DNA of 53,065 nt, from assembly GCA_900088475.1 (NCBI GenBank), contig FLMG01003187.1, forward strand, positions 1 to 53,065. Direction: 5' to 3'. The position numbers and the translations under genes are program-made. Shown here in pieces: positions 15,259-49,109 of the stretch (position 1 is the stretch's first letter; the number at the start of each line of letters is the position of its first letter). This stretch comes from Hyphochytrium catenoides (lineage: Eukaryota > Protista > Hyphochytriomycota). Under the pieces are notes generated by a model. That model was not told where the DNA came from, did no database searches, and saw nothing but the letters and a program-made list of their open reading frames with translations.

Positions 15259-16542
15259 TTACGAAGAAGCTATCTCTTCCCCTTCTCTTACGGCGTTCTC
15301 CTCACGCAGAAGTACGCGAGATCGTATGACGGATAGATCCTCAGATCTACAGAAGAACACTCTGAGAGACCTGAGCGTAAGTAGTGAGACGGTAAAGCCA
15401 TGGTTAAGGAAGAAGCTAGTCATTGAGATCCGCCTCATACTTGTCTGGTCGTTGTTGTCGACCTGTTGATGATTGGAGCCAAGAGAGAAGCGCCATCGCG
15501 TGAGGTCAAAGGAGTTCTGGCAGACGTTGGCCGACGCCCCAAAGTATAATAACGCCAAAAAGGTGAATTGCTGCGGTAATGTCAGCCCAATTGTAATGCG
15601 CATCATCATCCTTGAGAGCTTTGGGATGAATGAATCAGCAGCTAGTGGTCCTAAGAAGGTCCCTACGAAGTGACCCATTCCAAAGAGCAATCCCACGTCG
15701 CTAAAGCAGAACACGGGATAGTATGCGAGGCAGTATAACAGCGATTCAAAGAGGAACACTGCGGCATCAAAGGTGAGGATAGATCTCCGCCACAAGGCGT
15801 AGTTCATATGGAAGGAGTTAGCGACTGCACAAAAGACAATGGACGCGAGCTGCACCCATGCGATGACGGGAAGCCAAGAATTTTCTAGTGGGACGAAGAC
15901 CAACAGGAATTTGGCCGCGGACCAGAAGAGGACCAGGATCAGAGTAATCGCCGATAACGGTGTATACCATTCCGCCCAGAGGAGAGAGAAGCGCTGCCCA
16001 AAGACTTTATCCATGATTGTCTCGTTGCTCTGTTGCAGACTGAATTGAGTTAGTGGTGTACTCACCACTAGTGAACGCTTGTGAAAGCCTAGGATTTGAT
16101 CTCGACGGCGTATCCCTCTAGTAGAGAGCGTGGTCAGCATGTGTAGCGTGCCCGTTATGGCGGATGTTGGTGCCATTATACTAGAAACCCGTGAAGGAGC
16201 CTGAAGCTTGTGTCCAGGTTTACATGCCACCACTTTGACCACGGCAGATGATGGCATCTTTTCTCCGTCTTTTCCTTTTTCGTCGAGTTGTTGACCCAAG
16301 GCTATGTCTATCAAGCCGCGAGCTTTTGCCAATGCAACCTTCTCTGTTTCCTCGAGCACTGGCGTGCTTTGTAGTTGTTCTATCAGTGCGTTGGTCAGTC
16401 TCACTAGACCCCGGCCCTTCTTCTCATCAGTAAAAGTATCATCATCGCCATTGTTGTCAGCAACAATCCTAGCTTGATAGGTGGACGATGTCGCTGTTCC
16501 GGGACTCCACGTTGAGGAAGGTAAGGTCAACATTGACGACAT
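15259..16542 (-). CDS. Multi-pass membrane protein of unknown function (about 427 aa)
   Basis: Long ORF with a likely ATG at 16542 (MSSMLT). Hydrophilic N-terminal half, then about 6 hydrophobic segments. Confidence 0.7.
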   Translation of the reverse strand: MSSMLTLPSSTWSPGTATSSTYQARIVADNNGDDDTFTDEKKGRGLVRLTNALIEQLQSTPVLEETEKVALAKARGLIDIALGQQLDEKGKDGEKMPSSAVVKVVACKPGHKLQAPSRVSSIMAPTSAITGTLHMLTTLSTRGIRRRDQILGFHKRSLVVSTPLTQFSLQQSNETIMDKVFGQRFSLLWAEWYTPLSAITLILVLFWSAAKFLLVFVPLENSWLPVIAWVQLASIVFCAVANSFHMNYALWRRSILTFDAAVFLFESLLYCLAYYPVFCFSDVGLLFGMGHFVGTFLGPLAADSFIPKLSRMMMRITIGLTLPQQFTFLALLYFGASANVCQNSFDLTRWRFSLGSNHQQVDNNDQTSMRRISMTSFFLNHGFTVSLLTLRSLRVFFCRSEDLSVIRSRVLLREENAVREGEEIASS

Positions 16543-18633
16543 GTTGTCGTTTCTTGTTGGCTTGATAGGACGTGCTTTTTGCAATAATTTAACAAGGAGG
16601 AGCACGACGATGGAAAGGGGTGGCTTGTAGATACTATGCTCAAAACCGGCACCAGCAAAGCATCATCCTCAAGAGCGTTAGCAAGAACAATGCTAGGGCT
16701 GCCTAGCAACCGCAACGAAGTGTCCGAAGGATAGACGATGATGAATGATGATGAGTATAGTAGAGGCGACACGCCCCGCCTTGCTCGCTGGCGCTGTGCT
16801 GCGCTGCTGGTGCCGCCGCCTGCAACGTACGACAACGGAGCTGCTTCTGATGTCCACAGTGGCCTCGGCCGTCCTCGATACTCCACGGGGATCAATCATA
16901 GGCTAGGCACCTCTGTCACTTGGTCAGAGAAGAGCAGCCGGAAAACGGGGCCACTCCTGCTGCTTCTAGTAGCTGAGATAAATAACGGCTCAACACAGGG
17001 GAGACAACACAGGAGAGCCAACTGTTCAGCAGCTTCACCTTTGAACCTGGCAGAATGTGAATTTTGGATCCCCAAAGATATTCTTGACAGGTGAATATCC
17101 GCCTTCTTCACATCGCTTTTGGTTGTATGGAAGATCGAAGATGTCAAATATCAGGGCCCTGATAATGACGTATCTTTTTCCACTGTCTACTTTGGAGGGA
17201 CTATCCAAGCAAGCGTTATTACCAGGCTAGAAATGACAGCGCTTCTGAGGCTTGATTGTCCTATTGTAAAGGTCGCTGTCCATATATTGACGCTTACTTA
17301 TTAGAAAATATATGGCAAAGAGCAAGAACCACCTATGACAAGAAGGTTTGGACAAAGGAGGAATGCGGCGGTTGACACCTCTTCACAACTGCGGGCTTTT
17401 GCCTTTGATTCACATGGGGGTTGTCTCTCTCACCCAGGGAAAGCGACGGCGTTGGGTGAACCACCGAGGGGTTGGAACTATGGGATCACGGGCGAAGGAA
17501 GCGGGCAGGACTATGGGAAGCACGACTAGGACTCTGTCATGCTGCTTCGCTATTATTCTTCCCTTCCTAGAATTATGGTCTGTCCCACCCTTCAACAGCA
17601 TCATCTCTATCCTCTCTTCTTTCTGCGCCAAAAGCCGTGCTTTCTAGGGCCTTGCAGTGCACTTCCTCCCACGATCATCGCCATGATAATTCTGACTCTT
17701 GCAGTTCGAGGTGGAGATGATGTCCACGAAGGTGAGAGGCCAGCTCTATCTCTCTTCAACATCGTCTAGTCTTGCTTCTGCTAGCTGTGCCCTTATTAAG
17801 TCTACTCTTGGCTCTTCTACTGTCCTACTACCTTGCGGTCCGGGACCCCTGCCCTGCCCCCTTCTTCTCATCTTCATATATCTTGTCTCTCCTGTCTTGA
17901 TGCTTTGATTGTTCTACTACATTACTTCTTCCTCCTCTGCCACGCCTAGTAGCCTGGCTCTTTGTCGTTATTGGTCGAGAGTAGTAGCATCCGACGCTGA
18001 TCTTCCCACCATTTCCTCTCTGGAAGCTACTACTTGCCTCCTCCTCTTAACGATGAGGACTCTGGCGCTGTCTCCGAACCCCCCTTCCCTGGAAATGTCC
18101 CTTCTCGTCCTCCACCTCTCGTTTTTCCTAAGCTGCTCTTCTTCGGGTCGTTTCTCACTGCTGCGTTCATTGATGGTGATCCTTTCTGAGTCAGCTCGGC
18201 AGTTCCCCTGCAGCCTTGATGATGCTCCTCTTCCTTCTCGTCATCCCCTTCCCTCGTAAGCCAGAGCCCACGACTGGCCCACGTCGGTCACACGAGTGCT
18301 TATCCTTCCATCCTCTTCCTCTTGTGCATGCATGACCTTTCCAAGGCAGCGTGCCTGCTGTTAAAAATGTGGAAGGTGCATCTCTCTTGGAACTATCTTT
18401 CCTAGCTTCAGCAGCGTTCCCCACGACCCCAACAAACTTAAGAATATAGAATAATCAAGCTTACTGCCTTATAAGTTGAGTTCAAAGAGCTTCTCGTTCT
18501 TTCCTCCTCGGCTCAGTCTCATCATTCTCACTTTTCCCGCTCTTCGTCAGCATCGCCTCCAAGGAAACGTCCTACGATCACCGGTCGTCTCGATACCTTA
18601 GCTTTCTGCACGTCTATGCCTTAAGTTCCAAGG

Positions 18634-21213
18634 ATGTTGCAGCTGGCTAGGCTCAGTGCAATCTTTACTTTCTTTGTACTTCTCACTAGTCACGGTGATG
18701 CCGGCAGTGCGGCCCTCGCTCCAGATAATGATGGGAAGAAGGTTTTCATTCTTGGCCCTTTTAGAGTCGCAGTCAACATGAATACTATTGACCTTCATGT
18801 CACCACTAGACCTAGAGAAGAAGGAGGAGAGATGACAGTTCTACGCTCTCTTGGCGGCGGGGCGCCCTGGATTAGCGCTGGGTCCAGCCTAATCACTGTG
18901 AAGGAGTTTGATGGAGGTGTCTTTGAGTTCTCTGACGGCTGTTACCCAGACATTTGGATCCCGTCCAAGGCCAATAACAATGGGCCGCGCTGGTTCCGAA
19001 GAGATGCAGATAAGTGTACCTGTGTCCTTACTTCAAACCAAACCATCACATCAGTGGAGACACTGCTGCCCGCAGGAGACAAGAATGAAGGCGTTATCAT
19101 CAGAGGCGCCCTTCAGGGATAGAAGGGACGTAAAGCGTTCGCTCTTTCTTACTCTTTCACACTCTCCTATTCAATCTTAGCTAGCGGGAATGCTCTTCCA
19201 CAGCTAGAGTTCAACCTCGAAGCTGACAAGCTCCCGCCAAAGACAAGTGAAGAGCTACAGGTGGTTGATCGCCTGGTCCTGAGCTTGGGCTTTAGCGACA
19301 AGAAGAACAAGAACGGAGATGTGGTGGATCAGGAGGCGATCTACGGCTTTGGGGAACAGCCAACGAACATTAACATGCGAGGAAAAGTCTTCCCAACGGT
19401 GGTGATGGAGAACGGCATTGGAAGGGGCGATCAACCTATCTCTACCACTGTCAACCTGATATCTTCTTCCCCTGCCTCTGGAGCTCACTATTCAACTTAT
19501 GCCCCTCTACCAGGCTTCATCACCAGTGCTGGCCGCATGCTACTGCTGCATAACTCACGAGTACAGCCTCTGGGACCTTACAGAGGACAAGAGGCAATTC
19601 ACACAGTAGCCTTCCACCCCGACACTCCCGATAAAGTGGTAACACGCTTCCGTCTTCATGGCCACACTGGAAGCTTCTCTACGCCACTCGGCGCCATTGA
19701 AGCTCTCACTGTGCACACAGGGAGACCCCGCCCTCTGCCCAAATGGATCTATACCAATGGCGCTGTGATGGGTCTCACAGGAGGCTTGAGCGCTGTTACT
19801 GAGATCTATGATAACCTTAAGAAGTGGGAGGTGCCTGTCGCTGCGCTGTGGCTTCAAGACTGGACGGGTTTGCGCTTTGACAGGATCGGGAGTCGGCTCT
19901 GGTGGAACTGGGAGAGCGACGGCGATCATTACCCCGACTGGCGAGGCTTCAGTGGCAAACTCTTTGAGGAAGGAGTACGTCTGATGTCCTACATCAATCC
20001 CTATCTTTCCAATAGTGTGGCAGATAAAAAGAAGAACGCCCAGAGAAATCTCTTCGAAGAAGCCAGAGAAAGAGGCTTCCTGGTAGAGAAACGGACTGAG
20101 AAAGGACTGGAGCCTTACATTCAAACAAGCGGCTCAAAGGAGTTCTCTTATGGCACCGTAGATCTATTCAATCCGGACGCAGCGGCTTGGTATATGGACG
20201 TCATCCGATGCAATATGATGGGGATCTGTGAATGCGAGCAACAGAATCCGAAGCAGGAGAGCTGCCGCCCCGTAGTCTATGGCTGGATGGCTGATTTCAG
20301 CGAGTCTCTCGCCTTTGATGCTATCACCTACCAGGATAAAGAAGGAAGAGAGAAGGAGGACGCTGTGGCCCGGCACAATCGCTTTGTTGAGGCCTGGCAG
20401 GAGCTTAACAAGCAGGCCACAAAAGGCTATGATGACGTCGTGCCTTTCACGAGGGCAGGATGGACGCGAACGCCAGGACTCACACGGCTCATGTGGCACG
20501 GAGACCAGTTTGTTACCTTCGGGGAGAACGATGGCATGACCAGTGCTCTTCGCTCCTCTCTCTCGTGCGGACTCTCCGGCTTGGCACTGACCCACAGCGA
20601 TGTAGGCGGTTATACGGCTCTTAAGGTTCCCGTGATTGGGAGTCTCCCAGGGTTCAGGGACAGCAATCTATTCAACATTCAGCGGTCTAAAAAGTTGCTT
20701 CTTCGTTGGAGTGAGATGTCAGCTTTCTTAGATGTGATTATGAGGACGCATGTTGGCACGTCTCCTGAGGAGTCCCATCAGGTTTACACTGATCCAGATA
20801 CTGCTATGGCTTTTGCGAGAGCTGTGAGATGGCACCAGGCGCTTAGTAGCTACCGAGAGCACCTTATAGCCATGGCTGCACAATATGGACATCCCCTGAC
20901 CCGCCACCTTGTGCTAGAGTTTCCACAGGATCCTCAAGTAAGGGACCTGAGCCTGCAGTTTATGGTAGGGTCGTGTCTTCTCGTAGCGCCAGTGCTTTTG
21001 GAGGAGGCAAGGAATGTAGATGTCTATCTTCCTGCCGGCGGTTGGAGGCACGTGTGGACTAGGAAGATGTATGAGAAGAGCTCCGGAGGTTCATGGGAGA
21101 AGGTGGAAGCGCCGTTCGGGTCTCCTGCTGTTTTTGTGAGAGTTGGATATGTTGATGGGCCTATCGCTTGTGAGTCTATCGAGGCTTCACTGCTCGCTGT
21201 GGGAAAGAGGTGA
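18634..21213 (+). pseudogene. GH31 sulfoquinovosidase-like paralog, copy 2, interrupted by one in-frame TAG (pseudogene, read-through or assembly error)
   Basis: ORFs 18634-19122 and 19261-21213 are in the same frame and colinear with copy 1. TAG at 19120-19122 aligns to CAG in copy 1. A +1/-1 indel pair lies at about 19557 and 19592. Signal peptide and catalytic motifs are intact. Confidence 0.8.
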
Positions 21214-29333: not shown

Positions 29334-31595
29334 ATGCTGACCTTGGAAAGGCTCTCTGGCCTGAGCGCCAACGAAATTCGGAGCAACATCAAGCTCCAAT
29401 GTGCCGGAGGTACGGGATCTGCAGAGGTCCTGGCCATGCAAGGCGATGCACTGCTATCGATGCACATTCTGCAGATCATCATCAGAAAGTTCCCGTCTTT
29501 GACCACAAGAGAGACCATTCACGCGATGAAGGAACGCTATACCAGCAACGAAAGCCTCGCTTTTATCGCCAAGAAACTAAGAGTCTACGCTCTGATTGAC
29601 CCTCCCGTAGCCGCCAAAGGACAGCCATCTCGCAGGTTCAGTGAGTGGGAGATGGCGACTACTTTGGAGGCCATGATCCAGCTTGTGAACAACGCAAACG
29701 GGTACTCAGCTTCAGAGACTTTCGCTGCTGCCTTGATGGACATCCTGGACAGCTCAACGCTCTCTGAATCGTCTCCTTCTACTAGGGCAATCAGGAGCGA
29801 GAGCATTGGTGCTGGAGGCATTGGCAGTCAAGGTGACAAATCCAAAGAAAGTTCAAAAGCCGCGAGAATCTTCCCTCCTCCAGTGTCAGTGGTGGTGCAA
29901 AAAAGTAAGGATGAGGCCTCTCTTCCTAAGACTGCAACGCCACCAGCGGTCAAAAGTGGAGGCAAAGGGACGAAGAAAAGCCCCAAGTTAGGGCCAACCT
30001 CGACTACCCCGAGGGCAAGCAGCACCGCTCATTCACAAGAGCAAGGCCGTCAAGATGCAAATGGGAAGGCGCGCATTGCACCTACTACCAGCCCCAGTAA
30101 AACCCTTAGTAGTATAGGTAAAAAGGAGTCTCCTACAGCTTTCAAGCAGTCCCACGGGTCCTTAACGGGCAATCCCGGTACCGATCCTAGCCATTCAATG
30201 AAGGGAGAAGCTACACCTCGAAGAGAAAGTGTGACAGCCATTCCATCATTGGAGAAAAAGGAAGGGGAACAGCCAGTTACTCCTGTGAAGCTCTCACCTT
30301 CTGCCTCCCCAACAAAGAAGCAGAATAAAAGGAAGAAGAAAAAGCAAGAGAGAGAAAAGGATGGCCAGCAGGGCGATGTCAAGAAGGAACTGGATAGTAT
30401 GGCGACACCACCGTGCTCCTCTCACCTTTCGGAAGCAGCCATGAAGGCCGAACAGAGGAAAGGAACACTTCCCGTACTTGAGCAAGCAAGCAGTCTCTGT
30501 CCTTCCGGAGGAGCAACAAAGGAACCACGTGATCTAACCTTTACTGGATGTCACCTCATAACGCCGCGTAACTCTCAAAGGGCGTTGTTTGCGCTAATCC
30601 GAGGTCAGCTAGATCGTCTGGGTCCTTTGGAGCTTGACCAGCTTATGGTCGCTCTATGGAAAGAGAGAGGATCTTTTCCTTCCAGCTGTGGTCTTCTCTT
30701 GGAGCCTCAGACCTTACCAAGGGTAAAAGGAGACTACATCGCGAACCTCATCGTTGAAGATATGACCTTACCTACACCGAAGCTTATAACTCTGGCCTCG
30801 TTGCCGGACAATCTGTCCATCCCGTGTCCAGCGTGCAAGATACCGCTAAAGAAGCTAAAGAACGTTATTGAGCACATCAACGAGAGGTGCCCCCGGCGTT
30901 ATGTTAGCTGCGACCAATGTGACTTGCTGATGACTGCTGACTGCATGAACAACCACGATTGTGATGATATCATAGAGTGCAAGGACTGCGGATACAAGGT
31001 AAACAGCACTTTGTGGCATCTCCACCTCAAGCAAGAAGGGCCAATCAAGAGTTATACTAGGCAGGACTGTCAGCACTGTGGACAAATGCAGATGATTGAT
31101 GATGATATTGGCTATGTCACACACCACAACTGCCTCCTCACGTTCATAGTCTACGATATTGTGCCCTACCCAGGACTATCGGCCCAGGAGGCAGCAGACT
31201 TAAGAGCTATCTACATCTTTAGCGAGAGAACGACGTTTGGCTCCTGTGGAGCGTGTCAGCTTGATAACGTGGCTGAACGCCCACCGGTCGCTTACCGCCG
31301 GAAGGAAATGGTTGCACATTGCTGCACTAAGACTGGCCATCATACGCGCTTTCCCCCTGAGATGCCGCTCTGTCCGAGTACCCGAAGCGCATGGTATACT
31401 CCCGAACTGAGTGAACCTACCGCTTCTCAGGAGCCAGCCATGGCCACATCTTCACCACCTGCTACGATTGCTACCCCTACTCTTCCATCTATCGCTCCTA
31501 CACCGGAGGAGGATCTGACGACACAGAGGTTAAACGAGAAATCTACTTCACCATCCACTAGCGGCGCAATAGGAACGGCGTGCAAAGTTCAATGA
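29334..31595 (+). CDS. 753-aa protein: N-terminal Mini-III-like RNase III domain, S/P/K-rich linker with basic NLS-like tract, C-terminal TRAF/C2H2-like Zn fingers
   Basis: EVLAMQGDALL..I...FP......SNESLAFIAKKL...ATTLEAMI mirrors the RNase III signature ERLEFLGDAVL...N..LA..A..L...AD.FEA.I. Linker contains KKQNKRKKKK. Zn-finger region: CPAC...EHINERCPRRYVSCDQC...HDC..IECKDC...HLH. Confidence 0.75.
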   Translation: MLTLERLSGLSANEIRSNIKLQCAGGTGSAEVLAMQGDALLSMHILQIIIRKFPSLTTRETIHAMKERYTSNESLAFIAKKLRVYALIDPPVAAKGQPSRRFSEWEMATTLEAMIQLVNNANGYSASETFAAALMDILDSSTLSESSPSTRAIRSESIGAGGIGSQGDKSKESSKAARIFPPPVSVVVQKSKDEASLPKTATPPAVKSGGKGTKKSPKLGPTSTTPRASSTAHSQEQGRQDANGKARIAPTTSPSKTLSSIGKKESPTAFKQSHGSLTGNPGTDPSHSMKGEATPRRESVTAIPSLEKKEGEQPVTPVKLSPSASPTKKQNKRKKKKQEREKDGQQGDVKKELDSMATPPCSSHLSEAAMKAEQRKGTLPVLEQASSLCPSGGATKEPRDLTFTGCHLITPRNSQRALFALIRGQLDRLGPLELDQLMVALWKERGSFPSSCGLLLEPQTLPRVKGDYIANLIVEDMTLPTPKLITLASLPDNLSIPCPACKIPLKKLKNVIEHINERCPRRYVSCDQCDLLMTADCMNNHDCDDIIECKDCGYKVNSTLWHLHLKQEGPIKSYTRQDCQHCGQMQMIDDDIGYVTHHNCLLTFIVYDIVPYPGLSAQEAADLRAIYIFSERTTFGSCGACQLDNVAERPPVAYRRKEMVAHCCTKTGHHTRFPPEMPLCPSTRSAWYTPELSEPTASQEPAMATSSPPATIATPTLPSIAPTPEEDLTTQRLNEKSTSPSTSGAIGTACKVQ

Positions 31596-39175: not shown

Positions 39176-40660
39176 GTAACGAATAGGCCTATCAAGAGAC
39201 GGGAAGGAGAGGCATCACAATGAAGCACCTGACGGGGGCCGTATTGTTTCTCTTCATACAATTCGGGACTTTCTTGTTATATCCCAGGTCACCTTCATCC
39301 TTCCAATATTAACTGGTCACTCTTAATACCTCCGAATATAATAAATACGGTAGTTCATCGTTCTTTTCGGCCCTTGCCCCTCAATAGGCCCTCTTTGACA
39401 AGCATTTGAGGGTCTATCTTTTGGCCAATCCCAGGACGTTAAACGAGAAGCGAGGAGAATGGGCATCTCCCATTGGCTGTCCAAAATGCTTGTGCCTTCT
39501 CATTGGACCAAACTTTATACTGGCTATGACCAATGAGGCTTCTCTTTCTTATTTGCTATCATTTTATAGGCGGAAGGACTCCCTGAATCATTATTCCCAA
39601 AAATAGGCAGAGTCTTACGTTTTCAAGGTATTAGCTATGACATCTGTAGTGCTCGAGGTGGTTGAGAATGGGTAGGCCGGGGGCCTATAGGTTGCCGATC
39701 CGCGGGGGGTGCGGCAAAATTACCCATAGTTAATGTTCCTACAGTAGGAGCCCAGATTCTGACATTGTGGAGACTATAATTCATGTGGTGCTTCCGCCCT
39801 AACTTGGACATTGCGGGCGCTGTCTCCCTCATGTCCAAAAGTGCCAAGCGCAAGCCACTGACGAGGCTGTGAGCAGCCAGTGCATCAGCAGAAGTTTCCC
39901 ATCGCTCTAACTCTAAAAGAAGAGTCAGCGCACGCGCAAGAGCTCCTGCCTCGAGAAAGGTTGACGGGATGTCGGCGAAGATTAGGGGCTAGGGATGCAT
40001 GGTTTTTTACTCTAGTTGTTGCAGCGAGAAGCGCAAGAAAGAGCGGACCTGCTATCCTTGTATCTTGTATGGAGGACGTACAGTATGTGCGAGCGATGGT
40101 GGCGGCGCGAGATGGCCCACAGAGTTCATGGTGCCTGGCGATGTATGAGATTGGGAACCACTCATCATCAATAGATACTTGCTAGGTTGCTCTCTCTTCC
40201 TCCAAGGGCTATGCTTCTCTTTTAAGCTAGCCTATGGTATAGCTTCTTGATTGTAACTGATACGATAGCCAAAGACGGGGCATGCTTGGACCTATTTCAA
40301 GAAATGACTGGTATGGACAACTCATCGACGAAGATGTCCAATGGTCATTCACCATGATTGCTGTCCAACGGCATCCACTGTTAGGCGACAATGTGGAAAA
40401 GAGGTTACGTGGCTTCTTTGCTCCGTTGACAAAGATAACAAGATGCGAGCTCAGTCCAGCTTTGGGGCTCTGCTTATAAATTATAGCGAGTAACATTATT
40501 TAGCAGATCCGTGCCATCTATAGATCAGTTCCTTGAATGGCCTATTGTTCACGCCACGCCGCGCTCTTCTTTGTTCGTAGTGGAGCACTTGTTGGCTAGT
40601 CAAACACTCGGAAAGGATGCACGTAACTCTATATATTGTAAGCAAAGCCGCTAGCTTCCC

Positions 40661-43600
40661 TTAACCACTGTCTTCTTTCTCTTCGCGGTTGGTCTCAATC
40701 ACCGCACGGATTATCTGTCGCCATAGTCTTCGGAAGAAGAGGCGCCGCTCCTCTCCAGATAAAGCTTTCAACCTGTTCTTTATTACCTGATCGTTAAGCT
40801 TGTTCTTTCTCCTTTTGCTCTTATTCAAGCCTGTCCGTGACGTCTTCTCAACCTGACAAAAAAAGTGTTGAAGAATTTGAAAAGGCAGAGTGATTGACTC
40901 TTGGACGGCGCATAAAGGGTACCAACCTCGAGGCCAGAGAAGAGAATGAGCACTATCACGATGAAGGCCATACTGACAGTTCCCCAATCCAAGTTGCTTG
41001 ACGTGGCGAGAGAGAGGATGATATAGTAGGACGAGAGAAAGAACTGCATTATCAGCAGCAGTTCCTCCGTGAAGTTGTCGACCGGATCTATCAGAAGCAG
41101 CAGCGGTCAAAAGGATTAGACACAATCGGAGCTTCCTCAGGAAGACATCGGCGCCATCGAGAAAGACTCTACCTCGGAACGGCTTCTTTCTCAGCTGGGA
41201 AATAAGAGAGAAAAGCCATAGTACGCAGAGCATCAGCGAGCTCAACATCATGGATGTCTGTGTCTCCAGGATGACAGCAACTAGAACATTCTGCGTGATC
41301 TTCCAGAGGATCCAGTGCTCCATGTTGGGCTTGAGATAGTCAAATAGCACGTGAATATATCCATTTACTATGCACCGATCCACTGTTTCGGTAGCCGATG
41401 GTAATAGGAGATGAAGAGTCGATGTGGTCAGGGTTATCCTTAGCAAGAATGGAGGCCGTCAGGTCGCAGCTAGGATTGATAGCGACCTACCCTTGACAAA
41501 GCCAGCCACAATGACGTAGGGCCGGGCGCTGCTCACGTTGTGATCTTTCCATAGATAGCCGCAAGACATCTGAAGACCGGCAATCGCGGCACAGAGGAAT
41601 AGAAGAAAGTACGCAAAGCTCCGTCCTGATCGATAGTCGCTGCTCTCCAGAGTGATGCTGGCGTCAAGCTTCATCACCTAAACGGGAACGGCAGTCAGAA
41701 TGGGAGCAGGTCTCTTTGTTAAATAGCCAAAGCCTAGGGATAGGTCAAGAATGATGTTCTTACCTTTTGTCCCGCAATATCGCGCAGAACAATGAGCTGG
41801 AGCGCAGATCTCAAGAGAGGAAAGAGCAGGATATGGATCATGAGCTGGATGAAGATCTGAATCACCTGAAAGAAGAGGGACCACGTGTCAAAAAGTCTAG
41901 CCCTAGCGAAGACTCTGATAAGTGAAGCCTGGCCCTTACCCGTCTCTTCCAGAATCTCAGCTCCAATGCGGCTACAAGCAAGCAACGGAAAGTTAGTTTT
42001 GCTTCCTTTGTGCTCAAAGGGCGGATACGATGTTGGTCCTACCGTCACGAAGCGATGCTTTGGTCACAGTCTTCAACTTGAGTCGAGCGCTATAGAGAAG
42101 AGATCACGGATGTACAGAGAAAGAAGGTGAGAAGCTCCATTATGCTAAGCGAGAGAGAGAGAAAGAGAGAGAGAGAAAGAGAAAGAGAGAGAGAGTTAGA
42201 CAGAGAGAGAGAGAGAGATTATGACTATGGCAGATAGGAATTGATAGGACGCACTTGGTAGTCATTTCCTGAGGGAACATCAAGTCGACGACTTCGCCTA
42301 TATTGCGAAGGTGGTGGCGAGTGACAAGATAATAGTACACTCCGCTGGCAAGAGGGAACATCAGGGCCGCAAAGATCCAAAGGAGAGCTCCATCCACTAA
42401 GTGCGATACGATTGTGCCATAGCCTAAAAAGCCGCAGTTCTGGAGGATAGAGGTTGAAGAAAAAGACAATGTCAGGGGAAACGTCTGCTGCCATTGAGAA
42501 TGGAAAGAAGAGAAAAAAGTAACGTACATAGTCGCCATTATAGGCTGGAGGCAGGTCGTAGCCGAAGATCTCTAGGATACCCAGCACTGGCGTCCGACCT
42601 GAAGGAGAGGACTGTCCAAGCGCAAATTGTACTGCTCGGGATGCGATGTCAGGAGAGAAACTTTGTCAGATAAGAAGCGGAGAAGGAGATTAGCTGATGA
42701 TGCCAAAAGGGACAAGGCTGGTGGTGCTCTTGCATCCCGCGGCTTACCTTGTAAGAAGTAGATGACCAGTGTGGCCAGCCCAGAGATCTCGTTTGCATCT
42801 TGCAGCAGCGCAAGTAGAATACTGAAGAAGCCTAGCAGCGCCACTCCGACCCATAGCAAGACCTTCGCCTGTTGCTCCACACCAGTGCAGACTGGGTAGT
42901 AGTACACATACATGGCGACGGGAATTTTATCAAACAAGAGTAGGAACTAGTGCCGACACTTCTCTAGAGTGGTGACTTCAACTCACCTTCTGGCGCTTGG
43001 CATTGTGGCCCCAGCTTGACAAAGCCATCTTGGCAGCCCATGCAGAGCAGAGAGGTGTTAGTATACTCAAGGCCACAGCCGGAGACTGTTCCAAAGAGCT
43101 CTAATTCGTTCGGCTGCCGCTGCCCTGAACAAGAGCTTATGTTAGAAAGAATCCTGCAAGGTCGGAGCGCTATTCCATCGGGAGATAGACCGGTACCTGG
43201 GCAGAACTCGAGGCCACACTCGTAAGTGTTGGCAGTTAAGATCCGATCGGCGGCATTGGTCACAGCGTCTGACGTGGTGAGGGACCAGAGCTCCGCTTTT
43301 AAGAGCTGTTAAGCGGCAAAGCGGTCGTTACTTTCCCTTTCTTGAGCGGCATCACTGGTGGGCACAGGCTCACCTCTTTCTCAATAGATTTATGGTCAAC
43401 CCAATAGCCGGGCCGAGCGAAGAAGCGATCTTGCCCCTCACACCGTAGCATGTCGTTGACGGAGAAGCACGCAACGCACGTCAATCCGTCGATGCCAAAG
43501 AATCCTGAGAAGGCAGGATAAGCCCAGAGAAGAGAAAGAATGGCTTAGCCTTATAGAGAATAGGACATCCTCAAGTCTTAATCACTAACCAGCTCTCATC

Positions 43601-46109
43601 CCTCTTACCTGGCGGGCAATCGACACAGATCCCTTGCATGAACTGCTGACCACGCTTGCAGGCTAAGAAGGAGAACGTAAAAGAATGCTTTAGTCTGCTG
43701 ATCATCGTTGAATAATCGACAAGAGGGCAAGCAGGTACACCTACATCGCTTAAGCGCCGAAGGGTCTCGGCAGTCAAAGTGGTTCCAGCCAACGTCATAG
43801 GTGTCCTTTCCACAGCTAAAGTGTGCTGAAGACTTGCAGGTCGATGGACAGCAGTCCCCACCGTCCCAATTGCACGCTTCATTATTATTATCAGGGTCGC
43901 ACCAGCCGTCAGCCTTCCACTCAGGAAAGGCACAGACTCCCCCGTCTCTTGGTCGGGCAAGACAGGCGGGAGAAAATGTACAGGTTGTCTGCATCTGCTC
44001 CTCAGAGGCCACAAAAGCCGGCCCGGTCATAACCAGAGGATTCAGGACTGACAGACCAGTCAAGGCGTACAGCTGCAGCAGGACGATGGGGATATAGCCC
44101 TGAAGATACTGCTGCTGGTTGATGCCAAAGAGTATCTCTCCGTCAACGACAGCTTTTTGAACGGCATCACTGAGGTCAAAGGTACCGATCTTTACCCCGG
44201 AAATGGAGTTTGAACGGAGAAAGTTTAGCACCGGTGGAACGATGGAGGCTGAGGTGAGAAGCATCCCATCTGGCTGGCTAGAGTTAGGATAGAGCGCGCC
44301 TAAGGCAGCGTCAGTGACGGCCATGTTAGAGATCGAGACAATGACAATCTCTCTCGCGCTCTCACTGACTTGCAGTCCGTCAAAGTAGCCTTTGCAACGT
44401 TCCTCGAGCGCTGTGTTCCCGGCTTCTCCGATGAGACAAATGGGGCGCACAATGCCCTTGGACTTCATAAGCTTTCCTGCACCGACTCCAGCTTCATATT
44501 CTGTCTGTCCCACGTGGGTTAGGACAGTGATACCGATCGCATTGCCCACCTTATATCCTGAGTTAGCAGAGATTAGAGGCACCGTGCTGGCCTGAGCATT
44601 ACGAAGAGCGTCCTTCAAGCCGTCAGGATTAGGGATGGAGACGACTAGACCTTGAGGCTTCTGCTGGACAGCCTTCTCAATCAGATTGCTCATGACGCCC
44701 ATATCAAACTCCGTGCCTGGCGCAGAGTAAGAGAGAGGCTCTTCTCCCGTGCATGTGGATCCCACGATACTGCAGAAGGTGAAGTCCAGGCCCGTGTCGT
44801 TGCCAGCCATGCGAACGCCTTGCTGATAAACATACCAAAAGCCATCAAAGGACGCACCGTGAACCACAATGCGAAGACGGAGATCCTTCTGCGTCACTGT
44901 CCGCGGCAAAGGCGGCGTTGACAAGAACTTGGGCCCCGTGAGGATGTCAATCTGTGGCCTCTCGCCAATGGTGCCATAGATCACCATGAGGACAGTAGAA
45001 AGATAGCCTTGGAGAAACTGTTGCTGATCAACGACGAAGAACAGCTGATTGTCTTGGAGAAGCCTGGTTGTCTCTGACGTGAGGTCAAAGGTACCGATCT
45101 TCACAGCTTTCTCCTTTCCCATAGACTGCAATAGATCGTAGACAGCACTGCCCATGCCTGAGCTCAGCGTTAAGATGCCATTGATGGACGGCTTTGTCTG
45201 CAATAAGTTCTTCAGCACCTCCTTGGCCCTATAGGTGTTGCTCCCATCGACAGTGACAGTCTCCACCGTGCAGTTAACACCTTTGATGCAGCTTCCTAGC
45301 AATCCATCGGTAAAGCCCTGGCAGCGCTGGGTCAGAGACTTGTCGCTCTGGTCGTGAATGACGCAGACGGCGCCTGAGGCCTCTGTCTTGGCAAACTTAA
45401 CGCCTGCCGACTGTCCCGTCGGATAGTCTTCCATGCCGAAGTGCATCTCACTGAGAGCTAGCGTCGTGTTGGCCGTGTTGATGCTGAAGAGACGGTAGCC
45501 TTTGTTCCTCATCTCTAGGACTTTATCCTCACTACCAGCAGGGATCGTCGTGATAAACAGATGGCTCTTTGGGTCTAAGTTCGCTGTCAGTGCTCGGTTA
45601 AGCAGCGCTGAGACCACCTTCCCGCTGGAGCCCTGATAGGTGTCCAGGCGCTCCATGGCGGTGACGTACTCAAAGGATGTCTTGACTTTAAGTGCCTTTC
45701 CTGCCTCGTAGAACCCCGAGCGGACCTCTCTCCAGAGCTGGCTCTGCGTGGGATCGCCATGAGAGATCATATGCACTGTCAGCGCTTGGCGGTTAATGCA
45801 GGGACATGTCGAGGCCGCATCGTTCTGCGGATGCTCCTGCAGCCCACGATGTTGATAATAAGCAGTAGTGCTGGCCGTCGTGCTACTACGCCCGTTGCTG
45901 CTGCTAATGAAAGAGGATGTAGGAGTCACGGCGATGGCTCCGCCCGCCGCCAGCAGCCAGTTGAAGGCGAAGAAAACTGCTGGGAGAAACATGGCCAGAG
46001 ACCGAAGACGATGACCAGCAGCAGCAGCAGCAGACAAAGAAGGCAGCGCCGGTTCACAAGCAGCAGCAGCAGCAGCAGCGGGTGCCCGTAGTAGCAGCAA
46101 CAGCCTCAT
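40661..46109 (-). CDS. Multi-exon surface receptor: signal peptide, two periplasmic sugar-binding (PBP1) domains, LNR repeat, Cys-rich repeats and a C-terminal multi-TM (about 7TM) domain
   Basis: Exon 1 runs from 46109 (or ATG 45992) to 43745, with HG...W, RCxG, GTFD and (D/N)QQQ.LQGY motifs twice and an LNR (WKADGWCD..NN.EAC.WDGGDCC). In-frame GT-AG joins continue to exons 43662-43609, 43504-43374, 43305-42987 and 42891-42748 (CVDCPPGFFG, ARPGYW, LLCMGCQDGF, VIYFLQ). Later exons carry KLDASI, LFDYLKP..HW and KPFR.PVDNFTE. Junctions between about 42750 and 41400, and the last exon, are approximate. Confidence 0.85.
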
Positions 46110-46259
46110 GTTGGTGACTGTCTTCTACGGGGAGACCGACGATCCGCGAAATGGGAAAGAGCAGAAGAGAAGAGAGACTCTGATGTCTTCGGCGAGAGGG
46201 AAAAGAAAGGAGAAGAGAGGCCTCTTCCCGTCCTCCCCAAGGGAATGTCGAAGCCTCTT

Positions 46260-46263
46260 CTCT

Positions 46264-46333
<70 letters not shown>

Positions 46334-46586
46334 GTCTCTTTCTCCGTGAAACGAACAGTCACTTGAAGGGTTTGAGTGATGCATGACAGGCGTATTATTT
46401 CTTGCGTACTGTACATGATACCTTACGTTGAAGGGCTACAACGATCTTACTACGTTCCCCGGTGGGGGGGGGGCGGGGAGGAGGCACGTTTCTATGTTGC
46501 ATTACTTTCCCTCTGTCTCTCTCTCTCCCTGCTGTACGTGGCCGTTGAGAGGTGAAAAATAGAGAAAGAGAGAGAAAGAGAGAGAG

Positions 46587-46617
<31 letters not shown>

Positions 46618-46689
46618 AAAAGAGATAGAGAGAAGAGGGAGAGAAAGGAAGAGAGAGAAAGAGAGAGAGAGAAAGAGAGAGAGAAAGAA

Positions 46690-46760
<71 letters not shown>

Positions 46761-46815
46761 AAAAGAGAGAGAGAGAAGAGGGAGAGAAAGGAAGAGAGAG
46801 AGAAAGAAAGAAAGA

Positions 46816-46851
<36 letters not shown>

Positions 46852-47030
46852 AAGAGAGAGAGAGAAAGAGAGAGATGGGTGAAGAGAGAGTGAAAAGGAG
46901 AGCCAGACACAGAAAGAGAGAGAGAGAGGGAAAGAGGACAAAGAGACACAGAGAAAGAGAGAGAAGTAAAGAGGGTCAGAGAGAGACAGAGACAGAGAGA
47001 GATGGGGGGCGAGAAGGAGATAGAGACAGA
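46260..47030. repeat. (CT)n tract (46260-46342) and long GA/GAAA tract (46558-47030) in the divergent intergenic region
   Basis: Directly visible. A G-run lies between them at about 46464-46484. Confidence 0.95.
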
Positions 47031-47510
47031 GGCGGGACTGGAGGTGGTTACGGAGCGCCGAGGAGACGTCGAGGAGATACAATGGAGATACGGGAAGGAA
47101 GAGAGAGCCACAAGGAAGAGAAAGATGGTGGAGAAGGTGCTAGACAGAGTAGTTCCTACGAGGCGGCGCGGCGCGGTGCGGCCCCATCACGGGGAAGGTT
47201 GCTGGGAGGGTCTCTCAGAAGAGAGAGAGAGAGAGAGACAGCGTGAAGAAACGAGAGGAAGAGACGTGAGCTCATCCAGACGACGTCCTCTTCCTTTCCG
47301 CTACGCCTCTTCTCTTCTTCCCGCTTCCTTTCTCTGCCGGTGATACCTTTCCCTTGGTTGATTGGCTGCAGTTTACTTCTTAACTAGGAAAGAGAGAGCA
47401 AGCAGCAGCAGCAGCGCCTCTTCTGTCTGACTCATAGCTCCTCGTGGTGAGTTCCTTCCTTGGCGTGATTATTGGATTGGCAGTGGCAGCAGCGAGGAGG
47501 TTCCATCACC

Positions 47511-49109
47511 ATGCGGAGCCCATCATCAGCACATGCAGAAGGGGAGGACCGGAAGGCATATCTGGATGGCAGCCACAACGCCTGGGCGCACTCTCTGGGC
47601 ATTGCCGTGGTCGTGCTGGACCTCACAGCGCTGCCCGTCCTGCTGTTCATGCTGTGGCGACGAAGGGGCTTCTTCCCGCTCAACTCTACTCCTACTTTCC
47701 TTCTCCTCTGGACCCAGCTGGGCGCCAGTCTCTATGTCTTCTCTCTTCTCCAGTCGATCGTAGCGCCTACGATGCCTTGCTGGCTGCACATCTTCCTCTC
47801 CGTCTCAGATGGCTTTCCCTTCTTCAGTGGAAGCGCTTGTCAGCTCTTCAATGCGTGGTTTGTCTCTGAGTTGAAGCAAAGTGTTGCTCTAGGAAAGAAG
47901 AATGTGTTCACTAAGCGCTGCACAGCTGTGTCTGAAGGCTCTCTGAGGACTCTCTTTCTGCTCGCAGCCGTCATCTTTGGGATCCTTCCCTTAGTTCTGC
48001 AGTTAGCTGGTCGTCCTAGCGCCGTGCTGTCTGGATCGATGATGCAAGCCGAGTGTCTGACTTACTTTTCAAAGGCTGAGGTAAGCACATCAGGGACAGA
48101 GGATGCTTTCTCAGGCCTCCATCTCTAACCCTAAGCACTTTTCCTTCTGCCTGCCTGCTACTGCTCCGTCCACTCTTATAGAAGTGGATCCTACGGGTTC
48201 TATGGTGGGTTCCTGTCTCTTTGAACGTGCTCTTTGCCTACCTCATGCGGCACATGAAAGACGCCTTCAATCTGAAGGAGAACTGGAAGAGCATTCTCTA
48301 CTTTTTCGTCCTTGGGGCGCCGCTTAACGCTATGGCTAATGTTACCACGGGACTGGACGACACCATCCGCATCAACACCTACGTGGTTGGGCAGTTTGCC
48401 TTTGTATGTGCAGGCTTCTCTTACATGTGGTTCGCGTCTATCCTTCCGTTGAAGAGATCGATGGAGGAAGATGAAGAGCTCCGCAAGAGCAAGAATGCTG
48501 CCGCTTCCTATGCGGACTCTGGCCCCTCTGCAACCAAAAGGAACTCTATGACAAGTGGCGCGATCCCGACACTCATCCCTGTGTCCACGACCAAGGATCT
48601 CCGTCTTGCCCTACAGCGCCAAGACGTTGCCATCCAGTTCCAGTTGTACCTGGTCCGAGAGTTTGCCGGTAAGCTCTAGCAGCGGCTAATGTCCCGATAG
48701 ATAGTCAGTTAGATCGAAGTCCCTGACTTGCTCTGTGTACTCTCTAGTCGAGAATATGCTGTTTATCCAGGCATTAAGGGAGCTACGCGCGATCACGGAT
48801 AGAGAGAGTAGAGTTTCCCGCGCTCTAGAGATCTCGCGTGACTTTATCCGCGAGGGCAGTCCTTCGGAGATCAATATCAAAGACGACCTTCGAAGGGAGC
48901 TCCTCAGGAAGATAGACAGCAGCGAAAGGAAAGCGTCCTCGTCCTCCTCAGAAGATATTGATATCAACATCTTCAACCCTGCGGAGGATCAGGTGCTTCA
49001 GATGATGATAGATCCCTATAATCGCTTCATTCGTCTGCTGAGCGATCCTGCCAGCAAGAAGCGCAGCATGCAACGAAGACAGGTAACAGTCATCAAGCCA
49101 GCTCAGTAA
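47511..49109 (+). CDS. 7TM-RGS protein (regulator of G-protein signalling), join(47511..48080, 48182..48668, 48748..49109), 472 aa
   Basis: Two GTAAGC...AG introns restore a single frame. About 7 hydrophobic segments, RRGFFPL after TM1 and KDAFNLKE after TM5. Splicing creates the RGS motif FQLYLVREFA-VENMLF, followed by I.RDFI.EGSPSEINI and IFNPAEDQVLQMM.DPYNRF. Confidence 0.92.

What the first reader, a model, noticed from the sequence alone, without database searches (positions are those of the whole stretch)
40661..46109. Chimeric receptor: tandem bacterial-type sugar-binding domains + LNR + Cys-rich stalk + multi-TM domain
Seen: two PBP1 domains (about 45780-44925 and 44885-44015), one LNR (about 43935-43760), CxxC/PGY(F)W repeats, then a TM domain with F.Q, DASI, LF.Y...W and PF...DN..E motifs, and no obvious enzymatic tail. 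Established: class C GPCRs use a Venus flytrap + Cys-rich + 7TM layout. Inference: this is an independently assembled analogue built from ABC-transporter sugar-binding domains. Domain 2 (HGASFDGFW, NTALEERC) keeps the canonical binding residues better than domain 1 (HGDPTQSQLW, DKSLTQRC), so the two may differ in ligand.
Basis: partly seen in the sequence, partly recalled or inferred. Interest (0 to 1): 0.75.

Follow-up and report, generated by a model that had tools for sequence, protein, structure and literature searches.

The report
Inositol-type sugar sensor on CRMP-like membrane core
This is one intron-rich protist gene that joins two bacterial-type sugar/inositol-binding domains and a Notch-like calcium module to a roughly nine-helix membrane core related to the poorly understood CRMP receptors of malaria-type parasites; it is an unstudied variant of a known receptor family, not a wholly new invention.

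Summary
On the minus strand, a 14-exon GT-AG model with consistent phases (46109 to 40661, 1,401 codons) encodes the following parts:
- a signal peptide;
- two CUT2-type periplasmic-binding (Venus-flytrap) domains, both closest to inositol/rhizopine-type bacterial binding proteins;
- one LNR module;
- a 14-cysteine stalk;
- seven clear and two weak membrane helices;
- a basic 63-residue tail with no enzyme domain.

Allelic SNPs in these frames are 26 synonymous to 7 non-synonymous.

The membrane part gives no class C GPCR (7tm_3) signal. It looks like a divergent relative of the DUF7630 + nine-helix core of apicomplexan and ciliate CRMPs. That family has a weak link to Pfam TRP (PF06011, Pkd2/Flc). 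For this gene the link rests on two exon-level profile matches and colinear motifs. The full-length test on the joined model was left out.

In other protists the same sensor cassette sits on 7tm_3, histidine-kinase and nine-helix outputs. Proteins with PBPx2 + Cys-rich stalk + nine helices already exist, unstudied, in public data. Earlier notes of this scan describe look-alike genes on other pieces of the same genome. No RNA data exist.

Best reading: a small-solute (inositol-like) sensor on a CRMP-type core, a new variant of a known kind.

The parts
45930..46109 (-). Start codon and N-terminal leader. It has two hydrophobic stretches; the second, after Met40, looks like a signal peptide. The true start may be Met1 or Met40.
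   Evidence: ORF start. Hydropathy segments at residues 3-19 and 38-54. Four non-synonymous SNPs and two 3-nt indels that keep the frame lie at 45856-46016, partly just downstream of this span.
44901..45902 (-). Binding domain 1: Peripla_BP_4, a CUT2-type Venus flytrap. This is the more divergent copy.
   Evidence: Pfam. Domain envelope at residues 70-403. PDB 4ru1 at 5.8e-12. NF052284 at 116 bits, cut-off 420. Groups with first domains of histidine-kinase-type receptors, support 0.96.
43977..44921 (-). Binding domain 2: Peripla_BP_4, closer to bacterial inositol/rhizopine-type binding proteins.
   Evidence: Pfam best stretch at residues 460-681. Envelope at residues 397-711. PDB 4ru1 at 1.9e-20. 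NF052284 at 204 bits. Groups with the second domain of P0002 and the single domain of P0006, support 0.98.
43740..43964 (-). LNR (Lin-12/Notch repeat) module, the last part of exon 1.
   Evidence: PF00066 at 21.1 bits against cut-off 21.2. Pappalysin LNR hits in the PDB. 46-56% identity to LNR-repeat proteins P0003 and P0037.
43739..46109 (-). Exon 1 as modelled. Its donor GTACCT is weak. If it is not spliced, the ORF runs on to a stop at 43605.
42987..43662 (-). Exons 2-4 (43662-43609, 43504-43374, 43305-42987): Cys-rich stalk with 14 cysteines. The end of exon 4 aligns to the juxtamembrane DUF7630-like block of the family profile.
   Evidence: Splice sites and phases. Family HMM at 6.8 bits on hmm positions 3-47, the second-best of 2117 six-frame pieces. 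PSSM shuffle 42/1000. SNPs are 4 synonymous and 2 non-synonymous. No Pfam hit.
40927..42891 (-). Exons 5-13: the membrane core. Coordinates are 42891-42748, 42598-42528, 42439-42255, 42089-42043, 41971-41940, 41865-41764, 41677-41491, 41382-41173 and 41087-40927. There are seven clearly hydrophobic helices plus two weaker ones: one across the exon 5/6 junction and one at the start of exon 12. The micro-exons 8 and 9 are the least certain.
   Evidence: Exon 12 scores 12.8 bits against a profile of 84 DUF7630/nine-helix cores (the six-frame piece holding it scores 12.1 bits), the best of 2117 six-frame pieces in the window (E 0.0077). Shuffles reach this score 0/1000 times. Exon 7 SNPs are 4 of 4 synonymous. 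No 7tm_3 signal.
40661..40852 (-). Exon 14: basic cytosolic tail of 63 residues (19 K+R) and the stop codon. It is reached through a weak GTTGGT donor. The alternative is that exon 13 reads on to a stop at 40825.
   Evidence: No Pfam family.

Best explanation
This is a single gene for a membrane receptor of about 1,400 residues.

**Outside the cell**
- Two Venus-flytrap domains of the bacterial CUT2 sugar-binding type, of the inositol/rhizopine branch.
- One LNR calcium module.
- A disulfide-rich stalk.

**In the membrane**
- A core of about nine helices. It is a divergent relative of the DUF7630 + nine-helix core shared by apicomplexan and ciliate CRMPs and by many uncharacterised protist, algal and cnidarian proteins.

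**Inside the cell**
- Only a short basic tail.

**Most likely mechanism (inferred)**
1. A small polyol or sugar, with myo-inositol or a derivative as first guess, closes one or both flytraps.
2. The rigid LNR/Cys stalk passes the movement to the helical core.
3. The core signals in one of two ways: by opening an ion path (suggested by the family's weak link to Pkd2/Flc-type TRP-like proteins), or through partner proteins as in the CRMP complex.

**What is shown and what is inferred**
- Shown: the domains, the exon chain, purifying selection, and the existence of the same architecture elsewhere.
- Inferred: the ligand class, the topology, the family assignment of the membrane core, and all signalling.
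For: **Gene structure**
- 13 GT-AG introns of 68-165 nt, consistent phases, 4,206 nt ending in a stop.
- SNPs are 26 synonymous to 7 non-synonymous, and two 3-nt indels keep the frame.

**Ectodomain**
- Pfam Peripla_BP_4 twice.
- Both domains are best matched by PDB 4ru1. PMC10747050 describes 4ru1 as the binding protein of a verified myo-inositol transporter.
- Both domains are best matched in NCBIfam by the rhizopine binding protein NF052284.
- The nearest bacterial tandem protein, P0001, lies in an operon with IolD (904 bits) and IolG (373 bits), both above their cut-offs.

**Membrane core**
- A profile of 84 nine-helix cores places its two best hits in the whole 53-kb window on exon 12 (E 0.0077) and exon 4, in colinear order.
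- Shuffles reach the exon 12 score 0/1000 times.
- Exon 12 hits 56 of the 84 cores at the homologous place.
- A 7tm_3 profile finds nothing in the gene.
- Motifs are colinear by eye with the family consensus: Q in YFLQ, NC, FPL, D-x-S-I, Y...W, PFR, N..E.

**Family identity**
- 27 of 44 cores carry DUF7630, and 8 of 44 hit PF06011 (best 1.4e-8).
- The TgCRMPA core printed in PMC9815656 S2 Table matches the family consensus block by block.

**Same architecture elsewhere**
- P0010 and eight relatives are PBPx2 + PA + Ephrin_rec_like + DUF7630 + nine helices.
- The AF2 model of that core has pTM 0.71 and matches Ephrin_rec_like/DUF7630/TRP-bearing clusters at TM 0.75-0.80.
Against: - **No transcript evidence.** Only DNA contigs were found.
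- **Weak splice sites.** Two junctions use weak donors: exon 1 GTACCT and exon 13 GTTGGT.
- **Few exons carry the family signal.** Only exon 12 (significant) and exon 4 (marginal, 42/1000 shuffles) match the family profile at the expected place. Exons 5-11 do not rise above shuffled controls. The best match of exon 13 is at an unexpected profile position.
- **Many family-invariant residues are missing.** By my by-eye alignment only about 5 of the 12 family-invariant columns are kept. Both loop cysteines, the GxP proline, and the E, I and K of the Y..WE block are lost.
- **No Pfam support on the gene itself.** Pfam gives no hit on any downstream exon. The language-model search of exon 12 gave nothing.
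- **The CRMP link is by eye.** The comparison of CRMP to the family consensus is mine, not a score.
- **No solved structure resembles the core.** Foldseek probability is at most 0.33 and VIA Z at most 8, so the channel or receptor mechanism has no structural anchor.
- **Ligand not established.** Both domains score far below the equivalog cut-off (116 and 204 against 420 bits), so the ligand may differ from inositols.
Confidence: 0.6

Rival explanations
1. It is a class C GPCR analogue. The flytraps drive a G-protein-coupled helical bundle, possibly working with the divergently transcribed neighbour that another note reads as a 7TM-RGS protein.
For: - Many protist proteins carry the same PBPx2 cassette on a true 7tm_3 domain.
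- Our domain 2 groups with two of them, P0002 and P0006.
- CRMPa is called GPCR-like in PMC9670195.
- The head-to-head neighbour was noted by the scan.
Against: - No 7tm_3 signal in this gene by Pfam or by a dedicated profile.
- About nine helices, not seven.
- The family model has no convincing GPCR fold match: Foldseek E at least 0.18, TM at most 0.2.
- The three neighbour ORF pieces that I scanned gave no Pfam hit, so the RGS reading is unverified here.
Confidence: 0.08
2. It is a CRMP-like contact or adhesion sensor. The flytraps and LNR recognise glycans or surface molecules of prey, mates or substrate and trigger regulated exocytosis, as CRMPs do for rhoptries and mucocysts. Free solutes are not the signal.
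For: - The core family includes CRMPs, which are needed for rhoptry discharge in Toxoplasma and for exocytosis in Tetrahymena (PMC9670195, PMC9815656).
- Ciliate relatives combine LNR, beta-helix and PMP repeats with the same core.
Against: - The ectodomain here is a pair of closed-pocket small-molecule binding domains of the inositol/rhizopine type, not lectin or adhesive repeats.
- Whether this organism has extrusive organelles is unknown.
Confidence: 0.12
3. It is a tethered-binding-protein transporter or channel for uptake. The flytraps capture the solute and hand it to the helical core, which moves it across the membrane.
For: - The binding domains descend from ABC-transporter binding proteins.
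- 8 of 44 family cores hit PF06011, whose fungal members (Flc, Pkd2) are linked to FAD/haem import and calcium permeation.
Against: - No transporter fold was found for the core.
- The same cassette is mostly fused to signalling outputs, namely 7tm_3 and histidine kinases.
- No energy-coupling module is present.
Confidence: 0.1
4. These are two genes: a secreted PBPx2-LNR protein (exon 1 read to the stop at 43605), and a separate membrane protein encoded by the downstream exons.
For: - The exon 1 donor is weak (GTACCT), and the ORF runs on to its own stop.
- No RNA data exist.
Against: - The downstream exons start with a Cys-rich extracellular stalk but have no start codon with a signal peptide of their own.
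- The phases chain from exon 1 through to the final stop.
- Public proteins show the PBPx2 cassette or LNR on the same chain as a membrane domain: P0006, P0009, the P0010 family and the Blepharisma LNR proteins.
Confidence: 0.1

Closest known systems
CRMPs (cysteine repeat modular proteins) of Apicomplexa and ciliates: TgCRMPA/B, PfCRMP1-4, TtCRMP1/2
   Same: - A large modular ectodomain, then a Cys-rich (EGF/ephrin-receptor-like) stalk, then a nine-helix core with a short cytosolic tail.
- The published TgCRMPA core (PMC9815656 S2 Table) matches the consensus of the core family block by block. Our exons 12 and 4 hit that same family.
   Different: - CRMP ectodomains are adhesive (Kringle, lectin, EGF). 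Here they are two small-molecule flytraps plus LNR.
- Our core has lost many family-invariant residues.
- No link to rhoptry- or mucocyst-type exocytosis is known for this organism.
- The CRMP comparison is by eye only.
Uncharacterised public proteins of the P0010 type (EukProt COSAG05 and eight metagenomic relatives): PBPx2 + PA + Ephrin_rec_like + DUF7630 + nine helices
   Same: The overall logic and length are the same, 1,388-1,683 residues against about 1,401. Sources annotate them only as 'simple sugar transport system substrate-binding protein'.
   Different: - They have a PA domain where ours has LNR.
- Their PBP cassette is a different lineage: ours groups with the histidine-kinase-linked and 7tm_3-linked cassettes.
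- Membrane cores are only weakly alike (exon 12 E 0.05-1.4 against single members).
Protist class C-type receptors with a PBPx2 cassette on 7tm_3 (e.g. P0002 of Mucochytrium quahogii, P0063 of Seminavis robusta, P0006 with LNR)
   Same: - P0002 is the best overall hit for exon 1 (31% identity, 2.1e-98).
- Domain 2 forms a clade with P0002 and P0006 (0.98).
- P0006 also has PBP followed by LNR.
   Different: Their membrane domain is 7tm_3. Ours gives no 7tm_3 signal.
Bacterial CUT2 binding proteins of the inositol/rhizopine branch (PDB 4ru1 ACEI_1806; NCBIfam NF052284; tandem protein P0001)
   Same: - Same fold and sequence motifs, including the H..D.FW loop in domain 2, R-C-x-G, TFD and QQxYxQGY.
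- A tandem arrangement already exists in bacteria: P0001 is 690 aa and lies in a myo-inositol operon.
   Different: - The bacterial proteins are soluble or lipid-anchored partners of ABC permeases.
- Ours is fused to a eukaryotic membrane core.
- Our scores are far below the equivalog cut-off.
Fungal Pkd2/Flc 'TRP-like' proteins (Pfam PF06011)
   Same: - A signal peptide, an extracellular ligand-type domain, a multi-pass 'TRP-like' core, then a tail (PMC6727746).
- 8 of 44 cores of the family that our gene weakly matches hit PF06011.
- Pkd2 is reported to be calcium-permeable on membrane stretch (PMC9727806).
   Different: None of our own exons hits PF06011. The relation is at second hand and says nothing firm about channel activity.

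Membership tests
Peripla_BP_4 / CUT2 sugar-binding proteins | Match to the Pfam model above its gathering score, present twice | tested here: met
   142.9 bits against 35.1, two stretches. Two envelopes each cover at least 60% of a PBP profile.
Rhizopine/inositol binding protein (NCBIfam NF052284, equivalog) | Score above the curated equivalog cut-off of 420 bits | tested here: not met
   Domain 1 scores 116 bits and domain 2 scores 204 bits. NF052284 is the best family for both, but they are relatives only.
LNR (PF00066) | Match above the gathering score of 21.2 bits, with the Cys/Asp calcium-binding pattern | tested here: inconclusive
   21.1 bits for the isolated segment. The pattern C..DG.CD....C.WDGGDC is readable in exon 1. 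Strong matches to proven LNR proteins.
Class C GPCR (7tm_3) | Seven-helix domain matching PF00003 | tested here: not met
   No Pfam hit on any membrane exon. A 7tm_3 profile built from tandem-PBP receptors has none of its 11 listed window hits in this gene. About nine hydrophobic segments.
DUF7630 + nine-helix core (CRMP-type) | Conserved block spanning helices 6-7 (Y..W ... PF) | tested here: met
   Exon 12 at 12.8 bits, E 0.0077 across all 2117 six-frame pieces, top hit in the window. Shuffles 0/1000. 56 of 84 cores hit at the homologous place.
DUF7630 + nine-helix core (CRMP-type) | Cys-rich juxtamembrane element (DUF7630) directly before helix 1 | tested here: inconclusive
   The end of exon 4 scores 6.8 bits at profile positions 3-47, the second-best piece in the window. 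Shuffle 42/1000. Pfam itself gives no DUF7630 hit.
DUF7630 + nine-helix core (CRMP-type) | Nine membrane helices | tested here: inconclusive
   Seven clear segments scored per exon. Two weaker candidates were identified by eye from the exon translations, one across the exon 5/6 junction.
DUF7630 + nine-helix core (CRMP-type) | Family-invariant residues (12 invariant columns of alignment A2) | tested here: inconclusive
   By-eye placement keeps about 5 of 12: C after the helix-2 loop, P in helix 3, Q, P of PF, and possibly G. Lost are both loop Cys, the GxP proline, E/I/K of the Y..WE block and G368. This was not an objective alignment.
DUF7630 + nine-helix core (CRMP-type) | Full-length profile or fold match of the spliced membrane domain | not tested
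   Exon-by-exon tests only.
CRMP complex (functional sense) | Heterodimer of two paralogues; needed for regulated exocytosis | not testable with these tools
   Known only from Toxoplasma and Tetrahymena experiments (PMC9815656, PMC9670195). Look-alike genes in this genome are reported in earlier notes.
Pfam TRP (PF06011, Pkd2/Flc) | Match of the membrane domain to PF06011 | tested here: not met
   No hit on our exons. Only 8 of 44 family relatives hit it.

The most novel reading that the evidence does not exclude
The nine-helix CRMP-type core is an ion-conducting module, and this protein is a solute-gated channel. It would be a protist counterpart of ionotropic glutamate receptors: two stacked binding-protein domains on a pore, opened by an inositol or sugar. 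If so, the apicomplexan CRMP complex would trigger rhoptry discharge by ion flux, and this gene family would be a ligand-defined model in which to prove it.
Probability: 0.15. Interest if true: 0.85.

Novelty: new variant of a known kind. Interest (0 to 1): 0.55.

Why it matters
CRMP-type nine-helix proteins are essential for host-cell invasion in Toxoplasma and Plasmodium. How their membrane core signals is unknown, and their ligands are undefined. A relative whose ectodomain is a pair of closed-pocket binding domains, likely with inositol or sugar specificity, would give the family a simple soluble trigger. One could then add the ligand and measure ion flux, partner recruitment or exocytosis.

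The finding also shows that microbial eukaryotes reuse one bacterial-derived tandem flytrap cassette on at least three different outputs: class C 7TM, histidine kinase and the CRMP-type core. This is a clear case of sensor-module shuffling after transfer from bacteria.

Tried and rejected
1. **Word-index homology search with exon 1.** It returned only one bacterial protein, probably because words were drawn from the low-complexity leader. The exhaustive representative search was needed.
2. **tblastn and a narrow P0010-family HMM against the membrane exons.** These gave nothing significant. A broader profile of 84 cores was required.
3. **Profile-profile comparison.** Protein comparison failed internally four times. 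Local hhalign first crashed. It then gave the same score of about 130 for every exon, even a 10-residue one, at a gappy template region. I rejected this as an artefact.
4. **RNA evidence.** The run search found only DNA contigs. Laying them showed no joints.
5. **Solved-structure relatives of the core.** There was no sequence hit. Foldseek gave no hit at E 0.001 or better. The VIA-wide best Z of 8.0 is within the range expected for helical bundles.
6. **ESM-Atlas feature search of exon 12.** No usable hit.
8. **Neighbour gene.** Three ORF pieces gave no Pfam hit, so I do not use the 7TM-RGS reading.
9. **Literature.** Nothing was found for DUF7630, or for CRMP together with periplasmic binding protein.
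10. **CRMP sequences from the paper.** I compared them by eye only and did not type them into any tool.

Full report
**What is there**

The window is eukaryotic: about 50% G+C, short GT-AG introns and CT/GA microsatellites. On the minus strand an 834-codon ORF (43605-46109) starts the gene.

Pfam finds Peripla_BP_4 twice (142.9 bits, cut-off 35.1) and a weak LNR. A domain profile places the two binding domains at residues 70-403 and 397-711. The LNR segment alone scores 21.1 bits against a cut-off of 21.2. It aligns at 46-56% identity with proteins that are confirmed LNR repeat proteins, and with the pappalysin LNR region in the PDB.

**Gene model**

I read the minus strand downstream of exon 1 and found a chain of 14 exons: 46109-43739, 43662-43609, 43504-43374, 43305-42987, 42891-42748, 42598-42528, 42439-42255, 42089-42043, 41971-41940, 41865-41764, 41677-41491, 41382-41173, 41087-40927 and 40852-40661.

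- All 13 introns are GT-AG, 68-165 nt long, and have pyrimidine-rich acceptors.
- Phases fit throughout, and the coding sum is 4,206 nt ending in a stop.
- The weak points are the donors of exon 1 (GTACCT) and exon 13 (GTTGGT), and the two micro-exons 8 and 9.

No RNA run exists for this organism. The three holders are DNA contigs, and they show no joints. They do carry allelic differences. Of the listed variants that fall in my exons, 26 are synonymous and 7 are non-synonymous. Membrane exon 7 has 4 of 4 synonymous changes at third positions, and two 3-nt indels in the leader keep the frame. The frames I propose are therefore under purifying selection.

**Binding domains**

- Both domains are best matched in the PDB by 4ru1 (domain 2 at 1.9e-20, domain 1 at 5.8e-12). 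PMC10747050 describes 4ru1 as the binding protein of a verified myo-inositol transporter.
- Both are best matched in NCBIfam by the rhizopine binding protein model NF052284 (204 and 116 bits). Both are far below the equivalog cut-off of 420.
- The only word-index relative, P0001, is a bacterial tandem binding protein. It lies in an ABC operon beside IolD (904 bits) and IolG (373 bits), both above their cut-offs.

**The cassette elsewhere**

The exhaustive search found 2,533 relatives. The best is at only 31% identity, so this organism's own proteins are not in the library. The long hits fall into four groups:
- PBPx2 + 7tm_3, for example P0002 of Mucochytrium quahogii and P0063 of Seminavis robusta;
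- PBP + LNR + 7tm_3 (P0006);
- PBPx2 + histidine kinase (P0005, P0008);
- PBPx2 + PA + Ephrin_rec_like + DUF7630 + a multi-pass domain (P0010 and eight relatives).

A 7tm_3 profile built from them gives 28 matches among the 151 proteins held.

I built a FastTree of 219 single domains. Our domain 1 sits with first domains of the kinase-type proteins (support 0.96). Our domain 2 sits with the second domain of P0002 and the domain of P0006 (support 0.98). The cassette is therefore a shuffled module. Rows left out of the tree were domains covering less than 60% of the profile.

**Membrane core**

Pfam sees nothing in the downstream exons. Following the rule to search a spliced model exon by exon, I built a profile from 84 cores related to P0010 and P0161.

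- In a six-frame scan of the whole window (2,117 pieces), its two best hits are the pieces holding exon 12 (12.1 bits, E 0.0077, profile positions 293-342) and exon 4 (6.8 bits, positions 3-47). They are in the right order.
- Shuffled versions of exon 12 never reach its PSSM score (0/1000). Exon 4 is marginal (42/1000), and the other exons are not significant. Exon 13 matches best at an unexpected place.
- A 7tm_3 profile finds nothing in the gene.
- By eye the exons follow the family consensus helix by helix, but about 7 of the 12 invariant columns are not kept.
- Hydropathy gives seven clear helices; two weaker candidates were read by eye from the exon translations.

**What the core family is**

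- 27 of 44 cores carry DUF7630, and 8 of 44 hit PF06011 'TRP', with a best E of 1.4e-8.
- Named members include Blepharisma stoltei 'LNR domain-containing' proteins and an Ostreobium 'TRP C-terminal domain' protein.
- An AF2 model of the P0010 core (pLDDT 71, pTM 0.71) matches ESM-Atlas clusters from ciliates, green algae, haptophytes and cnidarians at TM 0.75-0.80. It matches no solved structure convincingly.
- The TgCRMPA and TgCRMPB core sequences printed in PMC9815656 agree with the family consensus block by block. That paper defines the CRMP core as EGF-like domains plus nine helices, and notes Dictyostelium relatives with other ectodomains.

**Verdict**

The membrane part is CRMP-type, not class C GPCR-like, and the assignment for this particular gene has moderate strength only.

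The architecture already exists in public data but is unstudied. No paper was found for DUF7630, or for CRMP together with binding proteins. Earlier notes of this scan report look-alike genes on other pieces of the same genome and reached a similar reading. I took the CRMP lead from one of them and tested it in part.

Noticed in passing
window 46150-47300: Long GA/CT microsatellite tracts fill the roughly 1.3-kb spacer between this gene's start and a divergently oriented ORF at 47472-48128(+). Another note reads that ORF as a 7TM-RGS gene. Three ORF pieces of that neighbour gave no Pfam hit.
   Followed up: partly
window 42144-42231: A CT-repeat tract lies inside intron 7 of the gene. The reads tool skipped it as a repeat.
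   Followed up: no
window 40600-46200: The DNA runs show about 1% allelic differences, plus 3-nt indels at 45856 and 46016 and a 4-nt insertion at 41918. The source is therefore heterozygous or a mixed population. By my model, 41918 lies in an intron.
   Followed up: partly
window 40927-41087 (exon 13): The exon 13 stretch ...SSNLDWG... matches the family profile best at the helix-2 motif (SLNLNWP, positions 98-120; 30/1000 shuffles), not at its expected place. This may be an internal repeat of the core, or chance.
   Followed up: no
L001 1-22073: This bacterial metagenome contig carries a 690-residue tandem binding protein between two ABC permease genes, next to IolD, IolG and IolE-like genes. 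The tandem arrangement of inositol-type binding domains therefore already exists in bacteria.
   Followed up: partly
window 10299-21213 and 29334-31595: Other notes on this window mention duplicated sulfoquinovosidase-like genes and an RNase III/zinc-finger fusion. I did not examine them.
   Followed up: no
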